Shown one piece after another: positions 1 to 44,302 of a DNA stretch of 64,000 bases. Within the stretch, counting starts at the first letter, position 1. Every line of letters begins with the position of its first letter. Both the position numbers and the translations under genes were made by a program. The notes beneath the pieces are model-generated. The model searched no databases, had not been told where the DNA came from, and saw only the letters and a list, made by a program, of their open reading frames with translations. This DNA comes from Vitrella brassicaformis CCMP3155 (taxonomy: Eukaryota; Protista; Chromerida), in NCBI GenBank assembly GCA_001179505.1, contig CDMY01000007.1:150470-214469 (forward strand), in the 5' to 3' direction.

Positions 1-1564
1 AGTGCAGTTCTTGGGGCGACAAGGCCTTCAAGGAGTGCCAGAAGTACGGCAAGGCCAACAAAGGTGACTGACAACTGACACCGTACACCACAGAGAGCAT
101 CGCCTCTTTTTCGCTTTGTTGGGTTTCTTTCTGGCCGCCAGTGTGCGACACCAAGTCGTCCAACTACACCTTCATCCCTCCAGTGTCAGAGTGGAAAGTC
201 AACCCAGGTACGCAAGACACCACACCCACAATGGGGCCATTGGATAAGACGCTCATCTTCGCACTGCCCCTTTTGTTTTGCTCGCAGAGGCCTCGTACCT
301 GCATTACTGCGCCAATGAGACGGTCAGGATGGCGGCGCAGCAGAAATGGAATGGCGGATCTGAAGTATGTTTAGTGCATCTGTCTGTGTGTGTGTGCAGA
401 TCTACGGCGTGGAGTTCAAGTCGACTCCCGACGTCGGTCTGCCCCTCGGTCAGCAACCAACGCTGCGTTGCATTGTGCGTCTAGACCTGCGATGGTCTGT
501 CTGTTCAGTGTCTGATATGTCATCGAATTTCTGCTCCAAGCCCATCGAAGTCAGCAAACACACACTCATCTATGGTGAGTGAGCACCGACCGATGAGCAG
601 CTTTCCTTTCATGAACTGGATGGTTCCGTGTGTCATCCATCAGCCGGCATCCAGAAGAACCTGGGCCCTGCTGGCGCTGCAGTCGTCATCGCCGACAAAG
701 CATGCCTTGGTGAGTGAGTGAGTGAGTGACGCACTCTTGCGCACACAATGTGGCTCGTGTCGGTCGGTTGTCCAGGCAACGCCAAGTCCATCTGCCCGAC
801 TCTGTTGGACTACAAGACGATGTCTGACAGCGAGTCGATGTACAACACGCCGCCCTGCTGGTCCATCTACGTCGTCGGTGAGCTGAGATGAACGGCAGGT
901 GCACTGCACTCCATCCCCTGCTGCTGGTGTGGCATGTGTGCCAGGTCTGATGGCGAAGTATCTGAAGGAGAAGGGCGGGCTGGCATTCTGGAAGGAATGG
1001 AGCGAGAAGAAGGCCAAGATCCTCTATGACGCCATCGACGGCTCAGATGGTACGCCACGCCCACACAATCACTGCTGGTCGTATGTGCTGCTCACTCACC
1101 CATGCTGGTGTTATGCAGGTTACTTCATCTGCCCCACTGCCAAGGACTGCCGCTCAAACATGAACATCCCATTCAGGGTAAGCTACACACATGTCCACCA
1201 AAGGTGTGTCCATTTGCTTTCGGCTCCGTCAGGTTGGTCGCGGCGACGAGGCCCTGGAGAAGAAGTTCCTCGAAGAGGGAAAGAAGCACAAACTCGTCAC
1301 ACTCGTAAGACACGACGAGCAGACAACGCACGCGCATTGCGAGGAAGAGACTGCCCATGAGTGTGGTATGCGTGCAGTCGGGGCACCGCACGGTGGGTGG
1401 CTGTCGAGCCTCGCTCTACAACGGCATGCCCATCGAGGGAGTGGAGACGCTCGTCTCGTTCATGAGGGTAAGTGAGAGAGCCACGTCACCCGACGTGGTG
1501 ATGGAAGCATAACTGGGCACGTCTTTGGCGTCTGCAGGAGTTCCAAGAGGCCAACCCGGAATGA
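1..1564 (+). CDS. PSAT1: Phosphoserine aminotransferase (class V PLP enzyme), multi-exon, 5' end upstream of window
   Basis: Manually spliced GT-AG exons give [54 protein letters not shown] (PLP lysine), [38 protein letters not shown], ending EFQEANPE* (TGA 1562-1564). All are SerC/PSAT hallmarks. Confidence 0.95.
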
Positions 1565-2334
1565 GAGAGACTGCGTAGCTGACTCGTGTCTCTTCGTAGT
1601 TGATCGTGTTGATTTGTAGCTGTCGTAGGCCACAAAGTGCTGCTGCATGTGTGTGTGTGGTGCACTCTTTTTGACGTGCCGATTTTGTGCACAAGGTGAT
1701 GCAGCTAGCTGCCTATCGCTCCCTACTCGGGTGGGGTGGTGCGAGCAGCCTCTCGTGGGGCTCAGCTCCAGGCGTGTGCATGCACATTTTTGCCAGGTTC
1801 CTCCCTAGACGAGCCACAGTGTCTTTTGACATACATGCGTGTCCACAGTTGGTTGACTTCCCTTTGTCTGCATGCCGACTTCGCCATTAACGTCTCTAGG
1901 AGATGGATACATGAATGAATCGAATACACGTACGCATCGATGGCGCGTAGAGCCGCTTAGGCCCCCCCTCCCTCCCACCAATAAGATAAAGTACCCCACC
2001 CCACACAGTGGATAAACATACTCACCGAGGGGAAGCATGATTCAGTAGATAGATACGCGCTGAATAAGGCAGATAGATAGCCAAGCTAGAGAAGAAAGCG
2101 CCTATTCCTTTTCTGTTGCCGCTTTGGGGTCGCCGTCCGCCACTTCGGCTGGTCTCGTTGGCACCAATTTCTCCTCGATGACGGTCTTTAGCTGATTGAG
2201 TTCCTCTTCCAGTCTCTGCATGACCCACCCAAAGAGGGGAAGGGAAGGGGGTTTGGGAGCCTGCAGGCTGTCGACCCTTGGGGCTCACCTTTCGCTTCTG
2301 TCTCTCTTCTTCCAACTCCTGGCGCAAGGCAGCC

Positions 2335-5300
2335 ATGGACGACTGTCTGCAGTGCAGAAAGGGTGAAGTAAGTTGTGCACCGACAGCAGTGCCAAGGCTG
2401 CCCCTCACCTTCTAGACGAGACGTTGCTGCTCTGCTCCCCAGAAGTCACTGATGAGGCCGTCCGGGCGTGCCGGTTGACGCTCGAGGGCGTCTTCGGCTT
2501 GTCCTCTTGGGGGACAGAGAAACTCGTGACTTCGAAGGGATTCAACGTGCTGCCGCGAAAGCCCATAAAGCTGCTCCCCTCACTGAAACGGCAGAGCAAC
2601 ATCAGAGGCAGAACAGGCAGTGGTCTGTGATGTGTCGCGGTCGCCTACTTTCTTCCCACAGGATGGCTCAGCCGATGCAACAGTGCGGTCTCCTCTCGCA
2701 TGATTCTTCGTCGCCACTGCTGAGCAAGCTGTGTGGGGTCCCAAGTCATCGCGAGGAACTCTATGCTCCAACTTAGTAGTAACTTGAAGGCCGGAGCGCG
2801 CTTGAGCCCCCCAAGTCGCCCCCAGTCTCTTTTTGGGGGAAGCGACATGTCCGACGAGAGGAAACACACACACCAGCAGCCGCCCGACCTGGATCTCCTT
2901 TATCAACTGCTGACAGAGAAATATACCGCAAGCACCGTCGACAGGTACGAGGACACTTGGGCTGTTGGGTGCGTTACTTGACTCGAGGTCTCTTACGCTG
3001 CAGGCATGTAGAATCTGTGACGCGGTACGCCGTCTACCTCGAAACAAGAGGAGGTAAGGAACGAATGGCAACCATGACTTCGGGCCCATGTGTGCGGTTT
3101 GGTTGGGTGGCACTGCAGGTCTGCCGCTGAGTCATCTTACAGCCGCCGTGCGCCTACTGGAGGTTGTTATATCGCGATACTTGGGCGGGCAGGCCTGCTG
3201 GCTGCCGGTGCTGCTGCGGATCATCGCGGTGTCAGGCAGGGCCCTCCTGTTGGAAAAAGCATCAGGTGCGAACATTCACACACAATCGATTGATTCCCCA
3301 AACCCCTGTGGCACTATGGACGCCATTTTGTCTCAGATCCGCTGACTCATGGGTACACGAGCAGAGCCAATGAAGACATACGCTCTGATGCTTTGACGAT
3401 GTATGGCTTCACAGCGCCGCTGTTCCGTCTTATTTGACGACGGTCGCCCTCCCGTTGGAACTGTAAGGACAGAGGACGCACGTGCAGATGTGCATTCGTA
3501 CAGCGCGCGTCTCCTTATGCCTTGCAGGGGCACCGCGAAGAGCGGTATTGAAAGGCGACCTCTTGACGAGGAGGCCTACCATGCGATTTGGCGGCTATAT
3601 GCCTCGCTGGCGCTGTCTCCTGGTGGCGAGACACCTGACGGAAAGAAGGCGCTGAAGCGTGCCCAGGCCTTCCAAGCGTTCGAAAAGACAGATGTCATCC
3701 AATGGGTGGGCAAGCGGCGATCGAAAGTGGGTGAGAGGAAGGCCGATGGCTCTTTGCGTGTTCGTGCCAGGCGTCTCGTGAGCTCGATCGGCAGGCCCCC
3801 CGATGTGTCTTGACGGAGGTGCTGGAAGTGTTGCGGGCGCTGTCCACCAGCAAGTAAGACCTGATAGGGCCACTGAGTCCTGCATATACACTGTGTGCGC
3901 CTCTCTTGCAGGGTTTTCTGTCAGCGGATGACCGAAGGGGTGCGGGTTTTGCTTCATTTTGGCTGACACCTTGCCATCTTCTGTCCCTCTGGCTGCAGGA
4001 CGTCCTTCAGAAGCTTCTTGTCCTGATCCGGGATATGTGTGAGGCCGGGTCTACGGAGGGAGTGGCTCAGATCGCGCTCGAGGCAACATGGAATGTGATT
4101 GTTTTGGAGGAGCAAGCAGCCAGCAAGGTCAGCCCGCACGTGTGTCCCGCTTGTGAGAGTAAACTCGCGTCTCTGTGCGTTAATCTTGTAGGTGCTGAGT
4201 GAGAGTGCGTCCCTCCATTCCATTAAGGGCATCTTGCACCGGCTAAGAGAGCTCAAGGGCAGTCCGGCAAAGGTGTTCAGGAATGAAATCCTACTCATCG
4301 CGCTGCTTGTCGCCAAGATGAGGGCAGACAAGGTGGCGCAGTCCTCACTGGTCTCTCTGCTGCTGAATATGCTTGTTGACGGGTGAGCAAGAGAACGAAG
4401 TGGCTCTGTCTCGCGTGTGTATCCTGTGTCTCTCTTATCAGTCTGCCCTTTGAAGCCAGTGAAGAGGAGTTGAAGAAGGAAACTCATGGTCAGTCGAATA
4501 TACATGTCTGTCCGCACTTTGTCTGTCAGTACCCCGTGCTTTCCTTCTGCAGATTTGATATGGCTGATTGTCATCGAGTGTTCGGGTGAGGGGTACGATT
4601 GCACACCCCTTCATGCATCATGCCATGTCGTCGCTTTCCATTTGTGCAGGTGCGTGTGCCCACTTTCCGTCCACCCGACAGCATCTGACGGAGGCCCTGT
4701 CATCTCTCATCGCCAAAGGCACTGCGCCGGGGGCTGCGTGGGCATGTCTCAGCGGCCTGCTCTCCTCCAATTGCGAGTTGCAAGCATCCATGAAGTCGCT
4801 CGTGGGTGAGGCGCTGAAGCAGCTCGCCAGCGGACACACAGACATTGAAAGAGTGCTCACGTTCCTCTCTGCGGTGAGCACACCTGACCTGATTGTGCGT
4901 ATGTTAAGAACAAATGCGTGTTTGCAGGTCGGCAAAGCGCGCCCGGAGGATCTTACGAGCAGAGGTAGAACACACATATGAAAGAGGGGCGTGGGAGTGC
5001 CACTCGCCCCTGTCGGTGTAGTCAGACTCTGAGATCCTCGACACGTTGACGACTACACTGGCTACATGCACTGGTACTCACCCATCAACTTGCGAGTGAT
5101 TACCGTTTTTGGGTATTCTTTGTGCCAGGGGAGTTGGATGAGAGGGATATGCGCTGCTCCACGATTGCGCTCTTTGTCGTGTCGTGTGTGTGCTCCGACA
5201 ACACGGCCATGAAGAACCACTTCAGGCATTTAGGCGGGCTGCAAATCATCTCAGCGATGCTCAAGTAAGGAAGTCCCGTGGTGTGTGTACGCCTGCATGT

Positions 5301-37394: not shown

Positions 37395-40300
37395 ATGAGT
37401 GACGCCGTCCCTCCACCGCCATCCAAGATAGGATCCCTCGAAGCCCCAACAGCCGCACTTGGCAACAGCGAGGACGGCGATGGAAAAACGCAGAACATTA
37501 ACGTGGCAGTGCGTGTGCGACCACTTCATGAGAGTGAGAAGAAGAGCTTCTCCAATGCGTGGCGCATCGACGGCAACGCCATTCACCAGGTCGGTGCAGC
37601 CTCGCAGAATGGACCTGGGCGAACATCGCGGCGACTCGTCCATATCTTTCTCTCTTTCTCTCAGGTCCTCCCGGGTGTCCAGAAGGGAGCAGTTGAGGCA
37701 GCGCTTCGGAAAGCGTCAGCTGAGCGGCCGCCAAAGGCTGCTGCTGGAGGACTTGGGTCGAGGGCGACCGCGAGCAAGGGAGAAGAGCCCTTTGAGCCCC
37801 TGACATTCACCTTCGAGACGATTCTGGGTGCAGACATCACAAATGCGGACCTATACGACCAGATGGCCACGCGGATGATCAAGAAAACAGTGTTCACAGG
37901 TACGAGGAAGACAGGACATACAATGGCCACTGAAAGCCATACATGTCTCGCAGGAATTAATGGCTGCTTTCTCACCTATGGCCCAACTGGATCTGGGAAG
38001 ACACACTCAATCATGGGGAATCACGACGATCCTGGCATCCTGCCACGCGCAATCGACGAGATATTCGCATCCATTGAGAGCTCGACAGAGAGCGAGACCA
38101 AGGATAAGACGCAAGAGACGCACGAGTTCTCCGTTCGATTCAGCTACTTAGAGATATACAAAGAGATGGTCACCGATCTTCTTCAAGACCCACCTGAGAA
38201 TCAAAACCTTGCCGTCAAAGAGGATCCCGGCAAAGGTACAACACCATGAATGTCTTTCATGTCTCCACGTATGTTTCCATGCAATCAGGATTCTTTGTAC
38301 AAGGAGTGCTCGAGCGTCTTATTTCGGGCGCTCAGGAGGCTCTGGTCCTCATCGGCGAGGGAGAGAGTAAACGAAGATATGCAGCCACTGACTTCAATGA
38401 GCGGTCCAGCCGATCCCATGTCGTTTGTACCTTCATTGTGGAAAAGACGACGACCAAAGTTACACGAACAAGCCCACGCGGTTCACCAGCTACGTCTCCA
38501 CCACTGCGCCGATCGTCATCACTCAATCTAGACAAGGCCAAAGGGGAAGATGGTATGACAGATCGGGGTCGGAAAGCAATCACACCAGATATTGGCGACT
38601 TGTGGCTACTGTGTGTACCCACAGTGCCTTCATCCAAGTCGGAGCGAGAGTTCGTGGCGGAAACAAAGACGACGTGTGTGGGGCGCTTGGTAAGTCTGTC
38701 GTGATGTTTACTACGTGCCAGTGTGAGTTCTCCCTCTCTTTCAGCACGTCGTCGATCTCGCCGGTTGTGAGCCGGCTGGGCACCTCAAGGGCGACCGGCT
38801 GGAGGAGGGCAAGTTGATCAACAAGTCCCTATTCTTCCTATCTGAGTGCATCTCCCGTCTCGTCAAGGCCCAACGCAAAGAAGACAAGGCGGAAAGGGAG
38901 GCGGCAGCCGCAGCGGCTGCAGCGTCGGCAGCGCCGGCACTCAAAGTGCCTCCATCCCCCCTTCCCAAGGGTCCCGGCCGCTCATCTGCCCCAACAGTGA
39001 CGGCCGGCACGATTCAGGAGAAGGCGGGCGCCGTATCACACACCCACATCCCGTATCGGGACTCCAAACTGACCAGACTCCTTGCCAATTCATTAGGAGG
39101 CAACAGTCACACGGTGCTCCTGGTCACGCTGAATCCCACAGAAAATCACGTTGACCAAGCCATCCAGGCTTTACGGTAGGCAGAAGGCGACGTCTCGCTC
39201 CCACAAGCCATGTACGCCGTGTCTCATGTTGAATACGTTCTTTCTTTACGGGCAGGTTTGCGGCCAGGGCCAAAATGATCAAGAACAGGATCGAGGAGAA
39301 CTTCATTTCGCCCGAACAATCCGTCATTCACCGCCAGAACGAGCTCATCAAACAACTGCAAGCACAGCTCCGGGATTTGGAGTCAAAGCTTAAGGATACT
39401 GGCCCTGGACGCGGCGACTTGCTTGTCATCACGAAACCACGAGTTGTTCTCCCTGATACAGAGAAGCGCGGCGAAGTGGATCCCGTTTTGTACGCGATGC
39501 GCCGCCAGTCTCTCGTGCCTCCTGGCGGCCTTGCGCGTGGCAAATCTGGTGTCAGTGAGGTGTCAGCGATCACGGAGGACAACGAGGAAGAGGAGGAGGA
39601 CGAAGGCACGCAAATGATCAATGAGATACAGGACAAGCTGGAGATGTTTCAAAAGATGATCTTCCGATCGCAAAGCAAAAGGGAAAAGGAGGCAGAGGTA
39701 AACGGAGACACACAGACATGACCACCATGAGGGATGGGCGTCCATTTTCGTTTTCTGTCTCTCAGGAGGAAGCCAAATACAATCGTGTCCGTCGCGCCAC
39801 TGAGGCAGCGCCGCTTGCATTGGCACGCGGTTTCAACAAGCTCGACATTCCGCCAGAGGCTACGCAAGCACGGCGCAGCTCCGCCATGCCTGGAACCATC
39901 TCCCTTCAGCTGGCATCCGCTCTCAGAAGCCCCGACGGCCGCAAGGGATCACTCAAGGTATCATGGCAAGACACAGTCCAAGAGGAGGATGACGGTTCAG
40001 AGCTGGCATCCTCTTGGGAGTCAATGAAGGAGAGACGCAAGCAGGCGGGGAAGAGGCCTGTTGAGAAGATCGACATGGCCACCAGCACCTCCCATCTGTC
40101 GCTCACTATCCCTGAGGCCCAGGCCGCGCCCAGTGACCTCGATAGAGTCAGCAGACGTCTGGAGAAAGTCGACGTTGTGTTGGAATACATTGTCAGCTAC
40201 CTCGACCGCAAGAAGAAGGGCCCCGACAACGAGGCTGTAGGCGAGGGGGTCGACAGAAGTGCCACCATGAAGCTGGAGGCCGATCTTGCGAAAACAGAGA

Positions 40301-43300
40301 AAGAGGAAGAGAATCCAGAAGAAGAAGAAGAAGAAGAGCAGGGACAAGACGGCATGTCTCGTCTTGCTCTTGCTGTAGACAAGGTCGAGGGCCGCATGTC
40401 AGGCTTAAAAGGCGGCATCAGAGGCATGATCGATCGCTCCAAGGCCGAGAAGATGCGCTGTGTTGAGAAGGAGAAAGAGCTCGAGTCAAAGAAGGAGAGG
40501 CTGGAGCAGTCTTACGAGGAGAAAGTCAAGAGCATCCAAGGAGCCACTGAGGAGCTTCAGGACCGCCTCAAGGCGAGCCGCGATGCAGAGTACGAAAGTC
40601 TTCAAAAAGTGGAGGACCTCGAGACCGTCACCGTGGCTCAAGAGAAGGATATCGAGAGATTGCAGCAGGAACTCATCGAGGCTACAGAAAAAGCGGAGGC
40701 CAAAGGTGAATCTTGGTGCTTTCAACTGCAAAGAACCACTTTGGTTGGCGATTCCCCTTGTCCTTGCTTGTCATGCAGACGCAGAGGTCGAGCGAGCCAT
40801 TGCGGCTGCTGAAAGCGAGAAAGAGGCGCTGAAGGCAGATGAGGCCCGACTGAAGGCACAAAACGCCCATCTCATCTACGAGAAGGTCAAGCCCATCCCA
40901 TATGCATTTCTCGAGACTGCCGTTCCTAGATCTGCTTTCCGCTTCCTCAGGTCACACTTGAGACCAAGTTGGAGGAGCTGCAGAAGCAAATGGAAGATTG
41001 CGAGAAGCAGTACGAGCAGAAACTAGATAATTTCAAAGATCAAGCGAGGAAGTTCCAAGAACAGGCGAAGGCCCAGATGCGACGCCTGTCAATGAACACA
41101 AGGGGATTGGTGGGCCACGGCATGCGTCTTGCTGACCGCAACGCCAGACGGCTGTCGGCAGCCAGCATGCCCATTCCAGAAACGAGAGATGAAGCCGAGC
41201 TTGAAGAGCCGCCGGCCAGGTCGGCTTCTGTGGGTGAGACATCCGGGCGACTGGTGCCTAAGGGCTCAACAGACGTCCTCATGTCCCGCGGTACAGTCGC
41301 TGTGTCGGACTTTGGCTGCCAATTTGGCGATGAGAACGAGATAGACCACCAAGGCATGCAGACCGAGACAAAGGAGCTAACATCCAGCGAGATGCAAGCG
41401 CGTGTGGAAGGCCGAGACTCAGGCGCTCTGCAAACCGAGCCTATTGAGGCTATCGAGCAAGCTATACAGAGCGAGAAGCTGATGGGCCTTACTGACCAAA
41501 TGACGCAGAGTGCGCCCGAGATCAAAGACCAGATGGAGCAGGCTGCACTAGAGACACAAGAGGCGGGGAGCCAACACATTGCGCACGCGCTATTGGAAGG
41601 GAGCGTGCAGACTGCGGTGTCTTTCAGCGGGGCGGGCTTTATTGAGGGCACCGTGCAGACAGAAGGCGCCGTGCTTCAAGACAGCGATATGCACATGGCG
41701 TCAGTTCCCCCTTCGGAGAGGCTGGAGGCGGCCATGCAGACAGATAACACTGAAGGAAGCCATGCTGAATCCCAGACTGACGCCCTCGAGAACCTCCTCG
41801 TCTTCAACAGCACGCAGACGGAAACTCGGGAAACAAGGGACCAGGAGGGCCAGATTGAGGCCCCCGTCTACCAGGACCAGAGCAGCCGGTGGGAAGGCGG
41901 CTCCCAAATGGATACGGCCGTCCAGACAAGTATTGGTGAGGGGATCCTGGCGAATGACAAGGCAACACAAGCTCTCCAGAACACTGATGTGGCTGAGGCT
42001 CAGACGGAGAGCCCCCTCATAACCGGAGCTGCGGCCTCAATCGGCAATCAGACGGACGAAAAGAAGACCGACAGCCGAATTTCGCAGACCGACGCCCTTC
42101 CTGTCCAGCATGCCATGAACCAGACGGATGTCTCTCACCTGAGGTGTCCAGCAACTCCACGAGCGACCCAAACAGTCATCAATTGCGACCATGCAGCCTG
42201 TCAGACTGACGCAGCAGGACTGGCTGAGCCACAGACTACGGCCATGCAGACCGACAAGTCGGCTCTGGGCACCTCGGGAGTGCAGACGCACACGGCAGCT
42301 CTTCTGGAGGCCAGCACATCTCATACGGACCTGCTTGGCTCGTCTCACGCCATGAACCAGACTGAAGCGGCTCTCACTCGGGTGCCTGAGAAGGAGCAGC
42401 AAACGCAGGTTGAAGTGGCGACGAGGGGCGGCGAAAGTCATACCGCGGAGTCCCTCTTGACGAAACGCCAAAGCCACTCGTTCTCCCAGACAGACCTGTC
42501 GCTGGTGAAAGTCGTCCCTGAAGACAAGCACACGCAGACGATGGCAAGGACGGAGAAGACGGCCACACAGACAGATGAGACGCGGATCGACCCCAAGCAG
42601 AAAGGCAAAGGAGTCCAGACACAAGCGGTGGTGGTGGAGGCCAAGCGCTCCCAGACCGACCCGCCCCCTCTGGAAGACGTCCGCAGCCAAACCGAGCTCT
42701 CACTTGTGCGACACACGACTCGCGACTCGAGCAGCCAGAGCCCTCAGATGCCACCCTTGCCGCCCCCAACCAGCAGAAGGGACAGCTCGGGCCAGACGAT
42801 TGAGTCGCCGCGACGCGCAAGCCCAAGTCAGACCGAAGACACGCCGAGGCGTGCTTCTGTCACACAGACGGATCGGGCGGCTTCGAGGGAGAGGGACATA
42901 CAGACCGAGCCGAGACAGTGCAGGTCCGTTGCCTCCGGAGAACCCAGCCCCACTGAAGTGCGCGTGCGATCGACCCAGACCGACAGCGGTGTCCCATCTC
43001 CCTCTCCCCGCTCAGAGGGCGGCATGGCTTGTCCACATTGGCACGGACCGATGGTGCCACCGTCTTCGTCGCTCATCACTCCTCGACCGACGGACCCATT
43101 TCAGCCGTTTCTGCCCCAACAGCAGCAGCATGCAGTGGAGCAGCAGCAGCAGCAGCAGCAACAGCAGTACCTGCAGCAGCCGCAGCAGCTGCAGACTGAT
43201 GGAGGCGAGATGCGTCGTGCTACATATTTGGTTGGCGATGGACCCGTGCAGCCTGAATGCCGCGGCTCAGGATACATCGTCATTCAGGCAAGCGACCGCA

Positions 43301-44302
43301 GCCCATCTGCACCTCCCCCCGCTCCCCCTCCCTCCCTTCATATCACCAACACGGTCACATCAGCCTCCCCTGCACGCGACCCTTCCGTGGGCGGTTCGGC
43401 GGTCGGGAGCCCGGAGGACAAGAGGATCATCGTGACACGCAGCTCCACAAGACAGGCACACGACGACCCCGTGGCCCATGTGCCAAGGAACAGGGAGAGG
43501 GAGGAGAGGGATGAGCGCCATGTGGAGCGGGAGAGGGACGGGGAGATGGCCGAGATGATTCGCTTGCTGCGGCGTGTGCTGGAAGGAAACATGCCCGCTG
43601 AGGCGGTGCCTGGTGCGCTGGCGTCGATTAGGGGGGGCGGTGGTGTGGCCGGCCAAGGCGTGCCGGCACTGGGCAGCAGGGGGCCCGAGTGTGGTGCGCC
43701 TAGTCTGCGGTGTCGATATGTGACGAGAGGGGCAGCAGGGGGGGCAGATGACCGCCAGCTGCAGAACGTAAGACAGAGACACGGGCTCCATTCTCTGCCT
43801 GCACATCTGCCTGTCGATTCTTGCTGTTCAGGAGCTAGATCAGCTGCGCCGGATGTTGGCCGATTTGACTGACAAATCAAGGGCCATTATATCGTCCCGT
43901 GATTTGTCGGTGAGGCCACACAAAAGAGAAGCACATGAGGCAAAGGACTGCTACCACCAACCCGCTCCATCGTCCAGACCCCCCCTGCTGGGCGGTGGCC
44001 CCGTCATCCACTGCCCGGCGGTTGGGCGTATTCCTGACACACACAAGATTGGACCACGCGGCACGGGAGGCGGCGGGGGCGCACAGATAAACATACTAGG
44101 CGGTGGTCTGAGAGGCCGGGGCATGGCGGCTGAGTCTGGTCAAGGAGTGGATGACCAATTTCTGTTCTTTGTCTCGACACCGGCCACTTCGCCAAGGAGG
44201 GCGGGGGTGGACAGCAGAAGGCACGAGACGATGCAGGAGAAGCTTGTGCCGCAGAGTGCGAGACAGGAGAGAGACAAGAGGCCTTTCTACTACAGGTGGT
44301 GA
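37395..44302 (+). CDS. Kinesin with N-terminal motor (kinesin-7/CENP-E-like), coiled coil and a long QT-repeat tail
   Basis: NINVAVRVRPL, AWRIDGNAIHQ, P-loop YGPTGSGKTHS, FSYLEIYKE, switch I NERSSRSH, switch II VVDLAGCE, INKSLFFL, HIPYRDSKLTRLLANSLGGNS. Coiled-coil exons follow, then a 967-aa exon. The last exon is spliced at about 43767 to 43832 and ends FYYRW* at 44302. Confidence 0.93.
41350..42990 (+). repeat. Protein-level array of about 30 xxQT[D/E/x] motifs in the kinesin tail
   Basis: Counted by hand in ORF 40969..43872: GMQTE, ALQTE, TVQTE, AMQTD, ESQTD, STQTE, GNQTD, ISQTD, MNQTD, ATQTV, ACQTD, ATQTD, RSQTD, VTQTD, DIQTE, STQTD and others. The spacers between motifs are divergent. 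Confidence 0.85.
43117..43194 (+). repeat. CAG/CAA trinucleotide tract encoding interrupted polyglutamine in the kinesin tail
   Basis: QQQQHAVEQQQQQQQQQYLQQPQQLQ read directly from the sequence. Confidence 0.9.

What the first reader, a model, noticed from the sequence alone, without database searches (positions are those of the whole stretch)
41350..42990. Kinesin-7-like motor with about 30 LC8/DYNLL-type QT motifs in its tail
Seen: about 30 QT cores spaced roughly 10-25 residues apart in a 550-aa disordered segment (for example KTATQTDE, RASVTQTD, RERDIQTE, RVRSTQTD, FNSTQTET). The spacers are diverged, which points to selection on the motif and not recent DNA slippage. Established: the LC8 hub binds TQT-type motifs, and multivalent partners (ASCIZ, Nup159, Chica) polymerise into rigid ladders. 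Inference: this kinesin may build an LC8-stiffened tail of unusual valency, working as a length ruler, an LC8 sink or a dynein link. I know of no kinesin described with such an array.
Basis: partly seen in the sequence, partly recalled or inferred. Interest (0 to 1): 0.72.

Follow-up and report, generated by a model that had tools for sequence, protein, structure and literature searches.

The report
Kinesin tail with ~30 QT(D/E) motifs
A kinesin of the alga Vitrella brassicaformis has about 30 short Gln-Thr-Asp/Glu motifs in a disordered tail just after its dimerising stalk; they look like docking sites for the small dimer LC8, which could zip the two tails into a long rod, but binding is only predicted.

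Summary
The window is Vitrella brassicaformis CCMP3155. The gene at 37395-44302 (+) is the public 2082-aa model CEL91648.1 (P0001): kinesin motor, long helical stalk, then a disordered tail. The tail has 30 QT dipeptides in 540 residues (about 7 expected; shuffle maximum 16) and 21-22 QT[DE] (about 1 expected). Thr codons are mixed, no DNA tandem repeat exists, and DNA similarity is confined to 15-35 nt around the motifs, so selection acts on the peptide core. Spacing favours 12 residues.

LC8 binding is the best reading but is unproven (about 0.5). In favour:
- The residues flanking QT are more like 79 published LC8 binders than tail composition predicts at -4, -3, -1 and +2.
- No charged residue occurs at -1.
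- The region is predicted disordered and starts just after a long helix.
- Vitrella has a canonical LC8.
- A complex prediction gave weak support (0.55 against a best control of 0.02).

Against:
- Only 6 motifs are TQT.
- 13 of 31 have -1 residues never seen in strong binders.
- Half have a small residue at -3.
- Scores lie between published non-binders and binders.

No relative of the tail exists in 1.84 billion proteins, and 119 kinesin-7-like relatives lack the array. Kinesin-7 assignment is only partly supported. No RNA evidence could be obtained. The scan noted two other TQT arrays elsewhere in this genome.

The parts
37395..44302 (+). Whole gene, 11 exons. It encodes the public protein CEL91648.1 / A0A0G4E8I5 (P0001, 2082 aa) of Vitrella brassicaformis CCMP3155.
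   Evidence: The HMMER search returned P0001 at 100% identity over the tail ORF. Exact peptide mapping of P0001 onto the window gives the 11 exons.
37395..39176 (+). Exons 1-6: kinesin motor domain (residues 1-491), with inserts and short introns.
   Evidence: Pfam PF00225 matches three exon pieces (E 1.4e-30, 3.8e-11, 6.1e-18). PDB best hits are kinesin-1 and CENP-E motors. The best named database hits are apicomplexan kinesins, kinesin-7 and CENP-E.
40372..41154 (+). Last part of the stalk: one continuous predicted helix, residues 841-1055. It crosses two introns, including the exon 9/10 junction at residue 988/989.
   Evidence: AF2 on P0001:840-1210 gives helix 2-216 with pLDDT mostly above 90. 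Exon map. The stalk is 57% E/K/Q/L/R/A.
40954..43767 (+). Exon 10 (residues 989-1926). It holds the end of the stalk, the QT array and the polyQ tract. The boundaries may be off by 1-2 nt.
   Evidence: The donor GTAA follows position 43767.
41344..42984 (+). QT[D/E] array: 30 motifs (8-mers, -5 to +2) at P0001 residues 1124-1663. One further isolated LQTD lies at 43192-43200.
   Evidence: Motif counts, shuffles and codons are.
43120..43194 (+). PolyQ tract, (CAG)n of about 25 units, downstream of the array in the same exon.
   Evidence: TRF.
43832..44302 (+). Exon 11 (residues 1927-2082) with the stop codon. No recognised domain.
   Evidence: Pfam gives nothing significant for residues 1660-2082.

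Best explanation
The array is a multivalent docking region for the LC8 (DYNLL) dimer in the tail of a dimeric kinesin. The long coiled coil ending near residue 1055 holds the two heavy chains parallel and in register. Downstream, each QT[D/E] site can add as a beta-strand to one groove of an LC8 dimer while the same site of the sister chain fills the other groove. Many individually weak sites, often at a 12-residue pitch, would then bind cooperatively. That would turn about 540 disordered residues into a beads-on-a-string duplex rod of roughly 60-120 nm (about 4 nm per LC8 dimer, as in Nup159). The rod would extend and stiffen the stalk between the motor and the C-terminal end.

Shown here: the motif array, its selection at protein level, predicted disorder, the adjacent long helix and the presence of a canonical LC8 gene.

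Inferred: LC8 binding, the number of sites occupied, rod formation and any length or rigidity role.
For: 1. The core Q0-T+1-[D/E]+2 is invariant or nearly so (31/31, 31/31, 22/31). It equals the published LC8 consensus at those positions (PMC3078936 abstract). PMC6607443 reports a strong preference for P/D/E at +2.

2. I tabulated position counts from the 79 binders and 32 non-binders of PMC6607443 Table S4. Against these, the array's residues are more binder-like than tail composition predicts at -4 (P=0.006), -3 (P<0.0002), -1 (P=0.003) and +2 (P<0.0002). No residue at -1 is charged (P=2.4e-4). T/V/I/S fill 18 of 31 positions at -1 (P=0.002).

3. The mean PSSM score is 8.9. QT 8-mers of 119 other kinesins score 0.4, random flanks 0.2, and published TQT-containing non-binders 3.9.

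4. The context fits LC8 clients. The region is predicted disordered and follows directly after a long helix.

5. Anchor spacing of 11-16 residues matches validated arrays. In dASCIZ, the QT2/QT3 motif windows start 11 residues apart and QT5/QT6 14 apart. Nup159 has five QT motifs forming a 20-nm rod next to a self-dimerising helix.

6. Weak, non-TQT sites (SQT, VQT, TMT, TST, VNT, VMA) bind in multivalent clients: ASCIZ and KANK1 with 15 or more sites.

7. Vitrella has a canonical four-exon LC8, 73/75 identical over exons 2-4 to the LC8 stand-in used in the model.

8. The complex prediction of LC8 x2 with P0001:1508-1573 gave 'weak support'. The score was 0.55 against a best control of 0.02. 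The runs agree in at least 44% of contacts and the partner pLDDT is at least 39. The mark was reached by 51 of 78 solved complexes and 2 of 108 mismatched pairs. At 0.60 or under, however, it was reached by only 5 of the 78 solved complexes and by all 4 mismatches that passed.
Against: Only 6 of 31 anchors are TQT. Thirteen have -1 residues never seen among the 79 strong binders, and LQT and AQT peptides are among the published non-binders. About 20 of 31 have a small residue at -3, and 4 have a hydrophobic residue at -4, both of which PMC6607443 says are disfavoured.

Only 7 of 31 pass my binder/non-binder midpoint and 6 reach the binder mean minus 1 sd. The PSSM is my simplified rebuild, not LC8Pred itself.

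The complex score lies in the band where passes are 'more often wrong than right unless the guess was likely beforehand'. It may reflect memory of solved LC8-TQT complexes, and the tool is uncalibrated for peptides and disordered chains.

There is no ortholog with the array, so there is no evolutionary test of the motif. There is no RNA or protein evidence.
Confidence: 0.5

Rival explanations
1. The QT[D/E] core is a short linear motif read by a partner other than canonical LC8. Candidates are one of Vitrella's divergent LC8-family paralogs, a Tctex/DYNLT-type light chain that also binds extended strands, or an unknown reader or kinase acting on the invariant Thr. The array recruits many copies of that partner.
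For: What is invariant is Q-T-[D/E], not the T-Q-T triad typical of LC8 clients. The -1 position is loose. The genome has at least 13 PF01221 matches, including a single-exon paralog (L001) whose groove residues differ from canonical LC8. A recurrent H at -4 and A at -3 ('SHAMNQTE', 'QHAMNQTD', 'DHAACQTD') is not the classic D/S-K pattern. PSSM scores are only intermediate.
Against: No alternative reader of QT[D/E] is known to me. [ST]Q (PIKK-type) is only mildly enriched: 20 against 12.9 +/- 3.0. No acidic residue is enriched at T+3, so a CK2- or FHA-type reading does not fit. The enrichments at -4, -3, -1 and +2 all point in the LC8 direction. H at -4 does occur in validated binders, for example RHIDIQTD of Chlamydomonas RSP3.
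Confidence: 0.25
2. The array is the eroded remnant of an old 12-residue tandem repeat that serves only as a flexible spacer. The QT[D/E] core persists for reasons unrelated to partner binding, such as solubility or composition.
For: The spacing shows an underlying 12-residue period. Local sub-families of units exist ('PRRASxxQT[DE]', 'SHAMNQT'). The tail is an orphan with no conservation outside this species. CAGA-type microsatellites, which read QTDR in frame, are common in this genome.
Against: Neutral decay would erase the core as fast as the spacers. Instead Q, T and D/E are kept while the third codon positions are randomised (Thr ACC 9, ACT 6, ACA 7, ACG 9). DNA identity is limited to 15-35 nt. 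No DNA tandem repeat remains. The flanking positions also carry non-random information.
Confidence: 0.15
3. The gene model is wrong. The large exon belongs to a separate transcript and is not part of the kinesin.
For: The public protein is a computed model.
Against: The public model joins the exons. A single predicted helix with pLDDT above 90 runs without a break across the exon 9/10 junction (residues 841-1055). The frame opens only 24 nt before the acceptor, after a pyrimidine-rich stretch. There is no ATG-initiated alternative upstream within the exon, because the listed ORF starts at TTG.
Confidence: 0.05

Closest known systems
ASCIZ/ATMIN LC8-binding domain (7 sites in Drosophila; 11 TQT plus 3 SQT/VQT in human)
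   Same: Many QT-anchored motifs in a long disordered region, separated by short variable linkers with motif starts 11-37 residues apart. Strong and weak sites are mixed, and non-TQT anchors contribute (PMC5963919).
   Different: ASCIZ is a zinc-finger transcription factor, not a motor. Its anchors are mostly ETQT; here only 6 of 31 are TQT and the invariant part is QT[D/E]. The valency here is nominally about twice as high. There is no sequence homology.
Nup159 DID-Dyn2 rod (yeast nuclear pore)
   Same: Consecutive 'QT motifs' lie next to a self-dimerising helix. LC8/Dyn2 dimers line up as pearls between two parallel chains and form a rigid rod, five dimers making about 20 nm (PMC4315244).
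   Different: Nup159 has five sites, against about 30 candidates here. It is a nucleoporin rather than a kinesin. Binding there was shown by EM and biochemistry; here it is only predicted.
KANK1 L2 linker-LC8 rod
   Same: A disordered segment of about 600 residues with 15 or more individually weak, largely non-canonical LC8 sites and short linkers. Cooperative binding turns it into a rod of about 53 nm that spans a cytoskeletal gap (PMC12803091).
   Different: KANK1 sites use very degenerate anchors (TST, VNT, VMA, IGC). Here Q-T is invariant. KANK1 is an adaptor protein, while this is a motor heavy chain. The candidate count here is about twice as high.
Myosin Va tail LC8 site (DDKNTMTD) and dynein intermediate chain
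   Same: An LC8 site in a motor-complex subunit, next to coiled coil, where LC8 reinforces dimerisation (sequences in Table S4 of PMC6607443; discussion).
   Different: Those have one site, or one LC8 site plus one Tctex site, not an array. I found no kinesin reported with a QT array.
Kinesin-7 / CENP-E
   Same: An N-terminal motor whose best named relatives are kinesin-7, CENP-E and KIN-7 proteins, followed by a very long stalk.
   Different: The CENP-E stalk is coiled coil throughout. Here about 540 residues of stalk-like length are a disordered QT array. Family placement is not resolved, because the PDB ranking puts kinesin-1 level with CENP-E. None of 119 relatives has the array.

Membership tests
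Multivalent LC8/DYNLL client (QT-motif array of the ASCIZ, Nup159 or KANK1 type) | An 8-10 residue motif anchored by [T/V/I/S]-Q-[T/V], with uncharged buried residues at -1 and +1 | tested here: inconclusive
   Q0 and T+1 are present in 31 of 31. At -1, T/V/I fill 12, S fills 6, and 13 are other uncharged residues (M, N, L, A, C, P, Q, G) not seen in 79 strong binders. None is charged.
Multivalent LC8/DYNLL client (QT-motif array of the ASCIZ, Nup159 or KANK1 type) | Flank preferences: P/D/E at +2, polar at -4, large or basic at -3, no bulky aromatic at -2 | tested here: inconclusive
   +2 is D/E in 22 of 31. Positions -4, -3, -1 and +2 are significantly binder-like against tail composition. 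But about 20 of 31 have a small residue at -3, 4 have a hydrophobic residue at -4, and only 7 of 31 pass the PSSM midpoint.
Multivalent LC8/DYNLL client (QT-motif array of the ASCIZ, Nup159 or KANK1 type) | The motifs lie in an intrinsically disordered region | tested here: met
   AF2 without an alignment gives block-mean pLDDT of about 30-42 (one short stretch at 51-60) and no secondary structure for residues 1205-1700. Only the first two motifs lie near a weak helix at 1132-1202. Order-promoting residues make up 16%. Single-sequence prediction only.
Multivalent LC8/DYNLL client (QT-motif array of the ASCIZ, Nup159 or KANK1 type) | Several motifs with linkers short enough for cooperative binding yet long enough for adjacent dimers (anchor spacing of about 11 or more) | tested here: met
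   Median spacing is 14 and the mode is 12. Two spacings are below 11 (5 and 10), so at least one member of each such pair cannot be occupied at the same time as its neighbour. For comparison, dASCIZ motif windows start 11 and 14 residues apart.
Multivalent LC8/DYNLL client (QT-motif array of the ASCIZ, Nup159 or KANK1 type) | The client self-associates (a dimerisation element near the array) | tested here: met
   A continuous helix of 215 residues (841-1055, pLDDT above 90) ends about 70 residues before the first motif, in a kinesin heavy chain. That the helix forms a coiled-coil dimer is inferred, not modelled.
Multivalent LC8/DYNLL client (QT-motif array of the ASCIZ, Nup159 or KANK1 type) | Physical binding of LC8 dimers to the motifs | not testable with these tools
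   Only a prediction is available: weak support, score 0.55 against a best control of 0.02, for one 66-residue fragment with five motifs.
Multivalent LC8/DYNLL client (QT-motif array of the ASCIZ, Nup159 or KANK1 type) | A canonical LC8 is encoded by the same organism | tested here: met
   PF01221 gives 13 matches. A four-exon gene at G000:C228 encodes an LC8 that is 73/75 identical over exons 2-4 to P0224:34-122.
Kinesin-7 (CENP-E / KIN-7) | N-terminal kinesin motor domain | tested here: met
   PF00225 matches three exon pieces. The motor is at the N-terminus of P0001.
Kinesin-7 (CENP-E / KIN-7) | The motor domain groups with kinesin-7 rather than other kinesin families | tested here: inconclusive
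   Named top hits are Plasmodium 'kinesin-7', Capsaspora 'cenpe', plant KIN-7 and CENP-E. In the PDB, CENP-E is best for the first exon piece, but Neurospora kinesin-1 (168 bits) is level with CENP-E (164 bits) for the whole motor. No phylogeny was built.
Kinesin-7 (CENP-E / KIN-7) | Kinetochore-binding or second microtubule-binding region at the C-terminus | not tested
   No Pfam domain was found in residues 1660-2082. CENP-E C-terminal regions have no model to test against here.
SQ/TQ cluster domain (PIKK substrate region) | A dense cluster of [ST]Q sites well above expectation | tested here: not met
   20 [ST]Q against 12.9 +/- 3.0 in shuffles (maximum 25), a by-product of S/T at -1. QT is far more enriched, 30 against 7.

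The most novel reading that the evidence does not exclude
In this kinesin an LC8-zippered duplex of about 20-30 sites (60-120 nm) takes the place of much of the coiled-coil stalk. That would be the highest-valency LC8 assembly known and the first in a kinesin heavy chain. Stalk length and stiffness, and so the reach of the motor's cargo end, would be set by LC8 availability or by phosphorylation of the invariant Thr. In the alternative novel version, the invariant QT[D/E] with a loose -1 position is the signature of a divergent LC8-family paralog with its own motif grammar.
Probability: 0.2. Interest if true: 0.7.

Novelty: new variant of a known kind. Interest (0 to 1): 0.5.

Why it matters
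Arrays of LC8 sites that turn disordered chains into rods are a recently recognised design principle (Nup159, ASCIZ, KANK1). All known examples are scaffolds or transcription factors with 5 to about 15 sites. A motor heavy chain whose stalk is partly such an array, with about twice the valency, would show that cells can build motor stalks from a tunable, partner-dependent rod instead of a fixed coiled coil. It would also give the LC8 field a natural extreme case for studying cooperativity among weak sites. The invariant QT[D/E] with a variable -1 position would widen the known motif grammar. On the other side, the array occurs in one orphan tail of a non-model alga, with no ortholog to test conservation and no experimental data. 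For now it is a well-founded hypothesis, not a finding.

Tried and rejected

2. Relatives of the tail. HMMER against 1.84 billion representatives found only the protein itself. A six-frame search of the organism's own genome found no paralog. The ESM Atlas feature search gave only a 0.78 hit of no value (one search failed on query length).

3. The array in relatives. None of 119 long kinesin-7-like proteins has it, including Toxoplasma, Neospora, Eimeria, Plasmodium and an unnamed EukProt transcript-derived protein (P0012, organism not given). Their maximum is 5 QT[DE]. A Chromera ortholog was not identified.

4. Other arrays in the genome, by DNA pattern. CAGACNGA triplets are swamped by (CAGA)n microsatellites, and the control pattern is equally frequent. 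With ACB codons only the kinesin itself, microsatellites and one short DNA tandem repeat remain; the likely reading frame of that repeat is RS-rich, not QTE. TQT-triplet patterns gave two hits, one of which is a separate TQT array.

5. Microsatellite origin of QTD. Rejected, because Thr codon usage is even across all four codons.

6. DNA slippage. Rejected.

7. CK2, FHA or MELT-type readings. Positions T+3 and T-1 do not fit these motifs.

8. SQ/TQ cluster. Only weakly enriched.

9. Pfam on the stalk and C-terminus gave nothing.

10. The divergent single-exon LC8 paralog (L001) was considered for the complex job and rejected, because its groove residues differ from canonical LC8.

11. P0224:34-122, which is 73/75 identical over exons 2-4, served as a stand-in.

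12. The complex prediction gave only 'weak support', 0.55 against 0.02. It is reported as such and does not establish binding.

13. LC8Pred itself could not be run. My PSSM uses position counts that I tabulated by hand from Table S4 of PMC6607443, and the binder and non-binder means are resubstitution values that assume independent positions.

14. and one search were malformed paper look-ups.
Full report
**What and where.** The window belongs to a 72.7-Mb assembly in 1064 contigs. The gene product is identical to the public protein CEL91648.1 / UniRef A0A0G4E8I5 of Vitrella brassicaformis CCMP3155 (P0001, 2082 aa). Exact peptide mapping places its 11 exons at window 37395-44302 on the + strand.
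- Exons 1-6 carry a kinesin motor (PF00225 on three pieces).
- Exons 7-10 carry a stalk rich in E/K/Q/L/R/A.
- Exon 10 (about 40954-43767, residues 989-1926) carries the finding.
- Exon 11 ends the protein.

I used the public protein returned by a search and did not join any spliced model myself.

**Checking the observation.** The 967-aa ORF 40969..43872 holds 31 QT dipeptides, 30 of them within ORF residues 131-670 (P0001 1124-1663; window 41359-42984).
- Shuffling the 560-residue segment gives 7.0 +/- 2.4 QT (maximum 16 in 5000 shuffles) against 30 observed.
- It gives 1.07 +/- 1.0 QT[DE] against 21 observed.
- QT is the most over-represented dipeptide, 4.3-fold.
- Aligning the motifs on QT shows invariant Q0 and T+1, and D (13) or E (9) at +2.
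- Information is weaker but above the null at -1, -3, -4 and -7.

At the DNA level TRF finds no tandem repeat in the array. Direct repeats are only 15-35 nt long and centred on CAGACNGA. The Thr codon is ACC 9, ACT 6, ACA 7 and ACG 9, and Gln is CAG 27 and CAA 4. So synonymous sites and spacers have diverged while the peptide core is kept. That is what purifying selection on the amino-acid motif predicts, and it is not what recent slippage or the CAGA microsatellites common in this genome would leave.

Spacing has a median of 14. Nine spacings are exactly 12, and 17 of 29 fall within +/-1 of a multiple of 12 (P = 1.2e-4; period 12 is the best of 14 scanned). This suggests an old 12-residue unit with some motifs lost.

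Only six anchors are TQT, and the '967-aa exon' is an ORF slightly longer than the real exon.

**Context in the protein.** AF2 without an alignment predicts residues 841-1055 as one uninterrupted helix with pLDDT mostly above 90. This helix crosses the exon 9/10 junction at residue 988/989. That argues, independently of the public annotation, that the big exon belongs to the kinesin.

After about 70 disordered residues and a weaker helix (roughly 1132-1209, taking together; this segment contains the second QT motif and lies just after the first), residues 1205-1700 are predicted unstructured, with block-mean pLDDT of about 30-42 apart from one short stretch at 51-60. Order-promoting residues make up only 16%. 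A polyQ tract follows at 43120-43194. The C-terminal 420 residues have no recognised domain.

**Is it an orphan?** HMMER of the tail against 1.84 billion representative proteins found only the protein itself. A six-frame search of the organism's own genome found no paralog.

A search with the motor region (candidates of 1145-3643 aa) returned 878 kinesins. The best are apicomplexan kinesins at 34-35% identity (Toxoplasma, Neospora, Besnoitia, Eimeria, Plasmodium 'kinesin-7'), then CENP-E, KIN-7 and fungal proteins. None of the 119 retrieved has more than 5 QT[DE], and none has a dense QT cluster comparable to 30 in 560 residues. The array is therefore lineage-specific, which also means there is no comparative test of the motif.

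**Testing the LC8 reading.**

*Literature.* The published consensus is [D/S]-4 K-3 X-2 [T/V/I]-1 Q0 [T/V]+1 [D/E]+2 (PMC3078936). PMC6607443 gives these rules:
- mid-sized, uncharged, buried residues at -1 and +1;
- Q at 0;
- P/D/E strongly preferred at +2, hydrophobic residues disfavoured;
- large or basic residues at -3;
- polar residues at -4;
- no bulky aromatic at -2;
- internal prolines unfavourable.

*Applying the rules.* At -1, 12 motifs have T/V/I, 16 have S/M/L/C/A/N and 3 are poor (P, Q, G). At +2, 22 have D/E and 3 are hydrophobic. About 20 have a small residue at -3, 4 have a hydrophobic residue at -4 and 4 have an internal proline. Only one motif (RERDIQTE) meets every rule. Four meet all but the -3 rule.

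*PSSM.* I tabulated position counts by hand from the 79 binders and 32 TQT-containing non-binders of Table S4 and built a simplified LC8Pred-like score.

| Set | Mean score |
|---|---|
| Published binders (resubstitution) | 20.3 +/- 5.1 |
| Published non-binders | 3.9 +/- 8.6 |
| 31 Vitrella motifs | 8.9 |
| 736 QT 8-mers from the other 119 kinesins | 0.4 |
| QT with random flanks of tail composition | 0.2 |

None of 20,000 resampled means of 31 random-flank 8-mers reached the observed mean. Seven motifs exceed the binder/non-binder midpoint, against 6-9% of controls.

*Position by position, using the binder-only matrix.* The array is more binder-like than tail composition predicts at -4 (P=0.006), -3 (P<0.0002), -1 (P=0.003) and +2 (P<0.0002). 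It is not at -5 or -2. No -1 residue is charged, although 24% of the tail is (P=2.4e-4).

So the resemblance to LC8 motifs extends beyond the QT[DE] core. Most sites nevertheless look like weak binders on their own.

**Are weak sites plausible?** Validated multivalent clients rely on such sites.
- Human ASCIZ needs three SQT/VQT motifs mutated besides its 11 TQT motifs to abolish binding.
- Drosophila ASCIZ uses a TMT site, with motif windows starting 11-14 residues apart where they are closest (PMC5963919).
- KANK1 has 15 or more mostly non-canonical sites in a 600-residue linker. They bind only cooperatively and form a rod of about 53 nm (PMC12803091).
- Nup159 has five 'QT motifs' next to a self-dimerising helix and forms a 20-nm rod of five Dyn2 dimers (PMC4315244).

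The Vitrella architecture has the same logic: a long dimerising helix, then a disordered region with QT sites at a pitch of about 12 residues.

**The partner.** The genome has 13 PF01221 matches. A four-exon gene on contig C228 encodes a canonical LC8. P0224:34-122, found by searching with the open frame that covers two of the exons, is 73/75 identical over exons 2-4 and served as a stand-in. A single-exon paralog (L001) has altered groove residues and was not used.

**Complex prediction.** Two LC8 chains with P0001:1508-1573 (five motifs) gave the verdict 'weak support'.
- The score was 0.55 (runs 0.55, 0.55, 0.57) against a best control of 0.02.
- The runs agree in at least 44% of contacts, and the partner pLDDT is at least 39.
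- The mark was reached by 51 of 78 solved complexes and 2 of 108 mismatched pairs.
- At 0.60 or under it was reached by only 5 of the 78 solved complexes and by all 4 mismatches that passed.
- The test is uncalibrated for peptides and disordered chains and may reflect memory of solved LC8-TQT complexes.

I count it as a small increment only.

**Most likely mechanism (confidence about 0.5).** The kinesin dimerises through its coiled coil. LC8 dimers bridge equivalent QT[D/E] sites on the two parallel tails. Many weak sites bind cooperatively and convert the tail into a semi-rigid duplex rod. At about 4 nm per LC8 dimer, 15-30 occupied sites would give 60-120 nm, extending the stalk.

Shown: the array, protein-level selection, predicted disorder, the adjacent helix and the presence of LC8. 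Inferred: binding, occupancy, rod formation and function.

The 'dynein link' idea is not supported by anything here. On current understanding LC8 acts as a dimerisation hub and not as a cargo adaptor (my own knowledge, consistent with the abstracts).

**Rivals.**
- *Another reader of QT[D/E] (0.25).* This could be a divergent LC8 paralog, a Tctex-type chain, or a kinase or phospho-reader. It is supported by the loose -1 position, the H-4/A-3 sub-pattern and the intermediate scores. It is weakened by the lack of any known reader and by the multi-position LC8-like signal. [ST]Q is only mildly enriched (20 against 12.9 +/- 3.0), and CK2- or FHA-type positions are not enriched.
- *An eroded repeat acting only as a spacer (0.15).* This is contradicted by core conservation with randomised synonymous sites.
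- *A gene-model artefact (0.05).* This is contradicted by the helix that crosses the junction.

**Kinesin family.** The best named relatives are kinesin-7/CENP-E/KIN-7, and CENP-E is the best PDB hit for the first exon piece. For the whole motor, though, kinesin-1 (168 bits), CENP-E (164 bits) and KIF13B (159 bits) are nearly level. 'Kinesin-7-like' is reasonable but untested by phylogeny.

**Novelty and score.** Multivalent LC8 rods are known. A kinesin heavy chain with such an array is not in the literature I could search, and about 30 candidate sites is roughly twice the largest described.

Two earlier first-reader notes of this scan report other TQT arrays elsewhere in the same genome. I found one such array myself on contig C466, with ETQT-type anchors. 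Multivalent LC8 clients with canonical anchors therefore probably exist in this organism, and the kinesin array stands out by its degenerate -1 position.

I rate this a new variant of a known kind, with interest 0.5. It is a solid, testable hypothesis, but it rests on statistics and one weak model, in an orphan sequence of a non-model alga.

Noticed in passing
L026 (G000:C466:53000-59000), nt 1007-3733, + strand: An open frame of 909 aa holds five TQT motifs with ASCIZ-like flanks (VVSSTQTDF, TKNTQTTA, HMETQTTS, AKETQTSP, TVETQTPP) and two TNTD motifs within about 230 residues. This is a second candidate multivalent LC8 client in Vitrella, with canonical anchors, and may be the 'eight TQT' array of an earlier scan note.
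   Followed up: partly
L001 (G000:C407) 1456-1764 +; L004/L006 (G000:C228); other PF01221 loci L002, L003, L005, L007, L008: The genome has at least 13 LC8-family (PF01221) matches. One is a canonical four-exon LC8. Another is a single-exon 103-aa paralog whose residues at the positions that bind the motif Gln and line the groove differ from canonical LC8. This suggests an expanded and diversified light-chain family.
   Followed up: partly
genome-wide, for example G000:C182:58737-58916, C104:25982-26093, C1052:19104-19215: (CAGA)n, (CAGACCGA)n and related microsatellites are very common. They would read QTDR in one frame and they swamp DNA-pattern searches for QT[DE] arrays. The control pattern is equally frequent.
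   Followed up: partly
window 43120-43194 (+): A (CAG)n tract of about 25 units encodes a polyQ stretch directly downstream of the QT array in the same exon. One more isolated LQTD follows it at 43192.
   Followed up: no
window 37593-37667, 37902-37955, 38238-38290, 38552-38623, 38690-38744: The motor domain is interrupted by several very short introns (about 53-75 nt). Some of them stay open in frame, so the raw ORFs read through them. The motor also carries long low-complexity inserts (for example the Ala-rich loop at P0001 ~390-460).
   Followed up: no
L025 (G000:C389:49500-53500) nt 1554-2072: A short DNA tandem repeat matched the QTE pattern. Its more plausible reading frame is an Arg/Ser/Pro-rich (SPPPRS) low-complexity protein, so the QTE reading there is probably a frame artefact.
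   Followed up: partly
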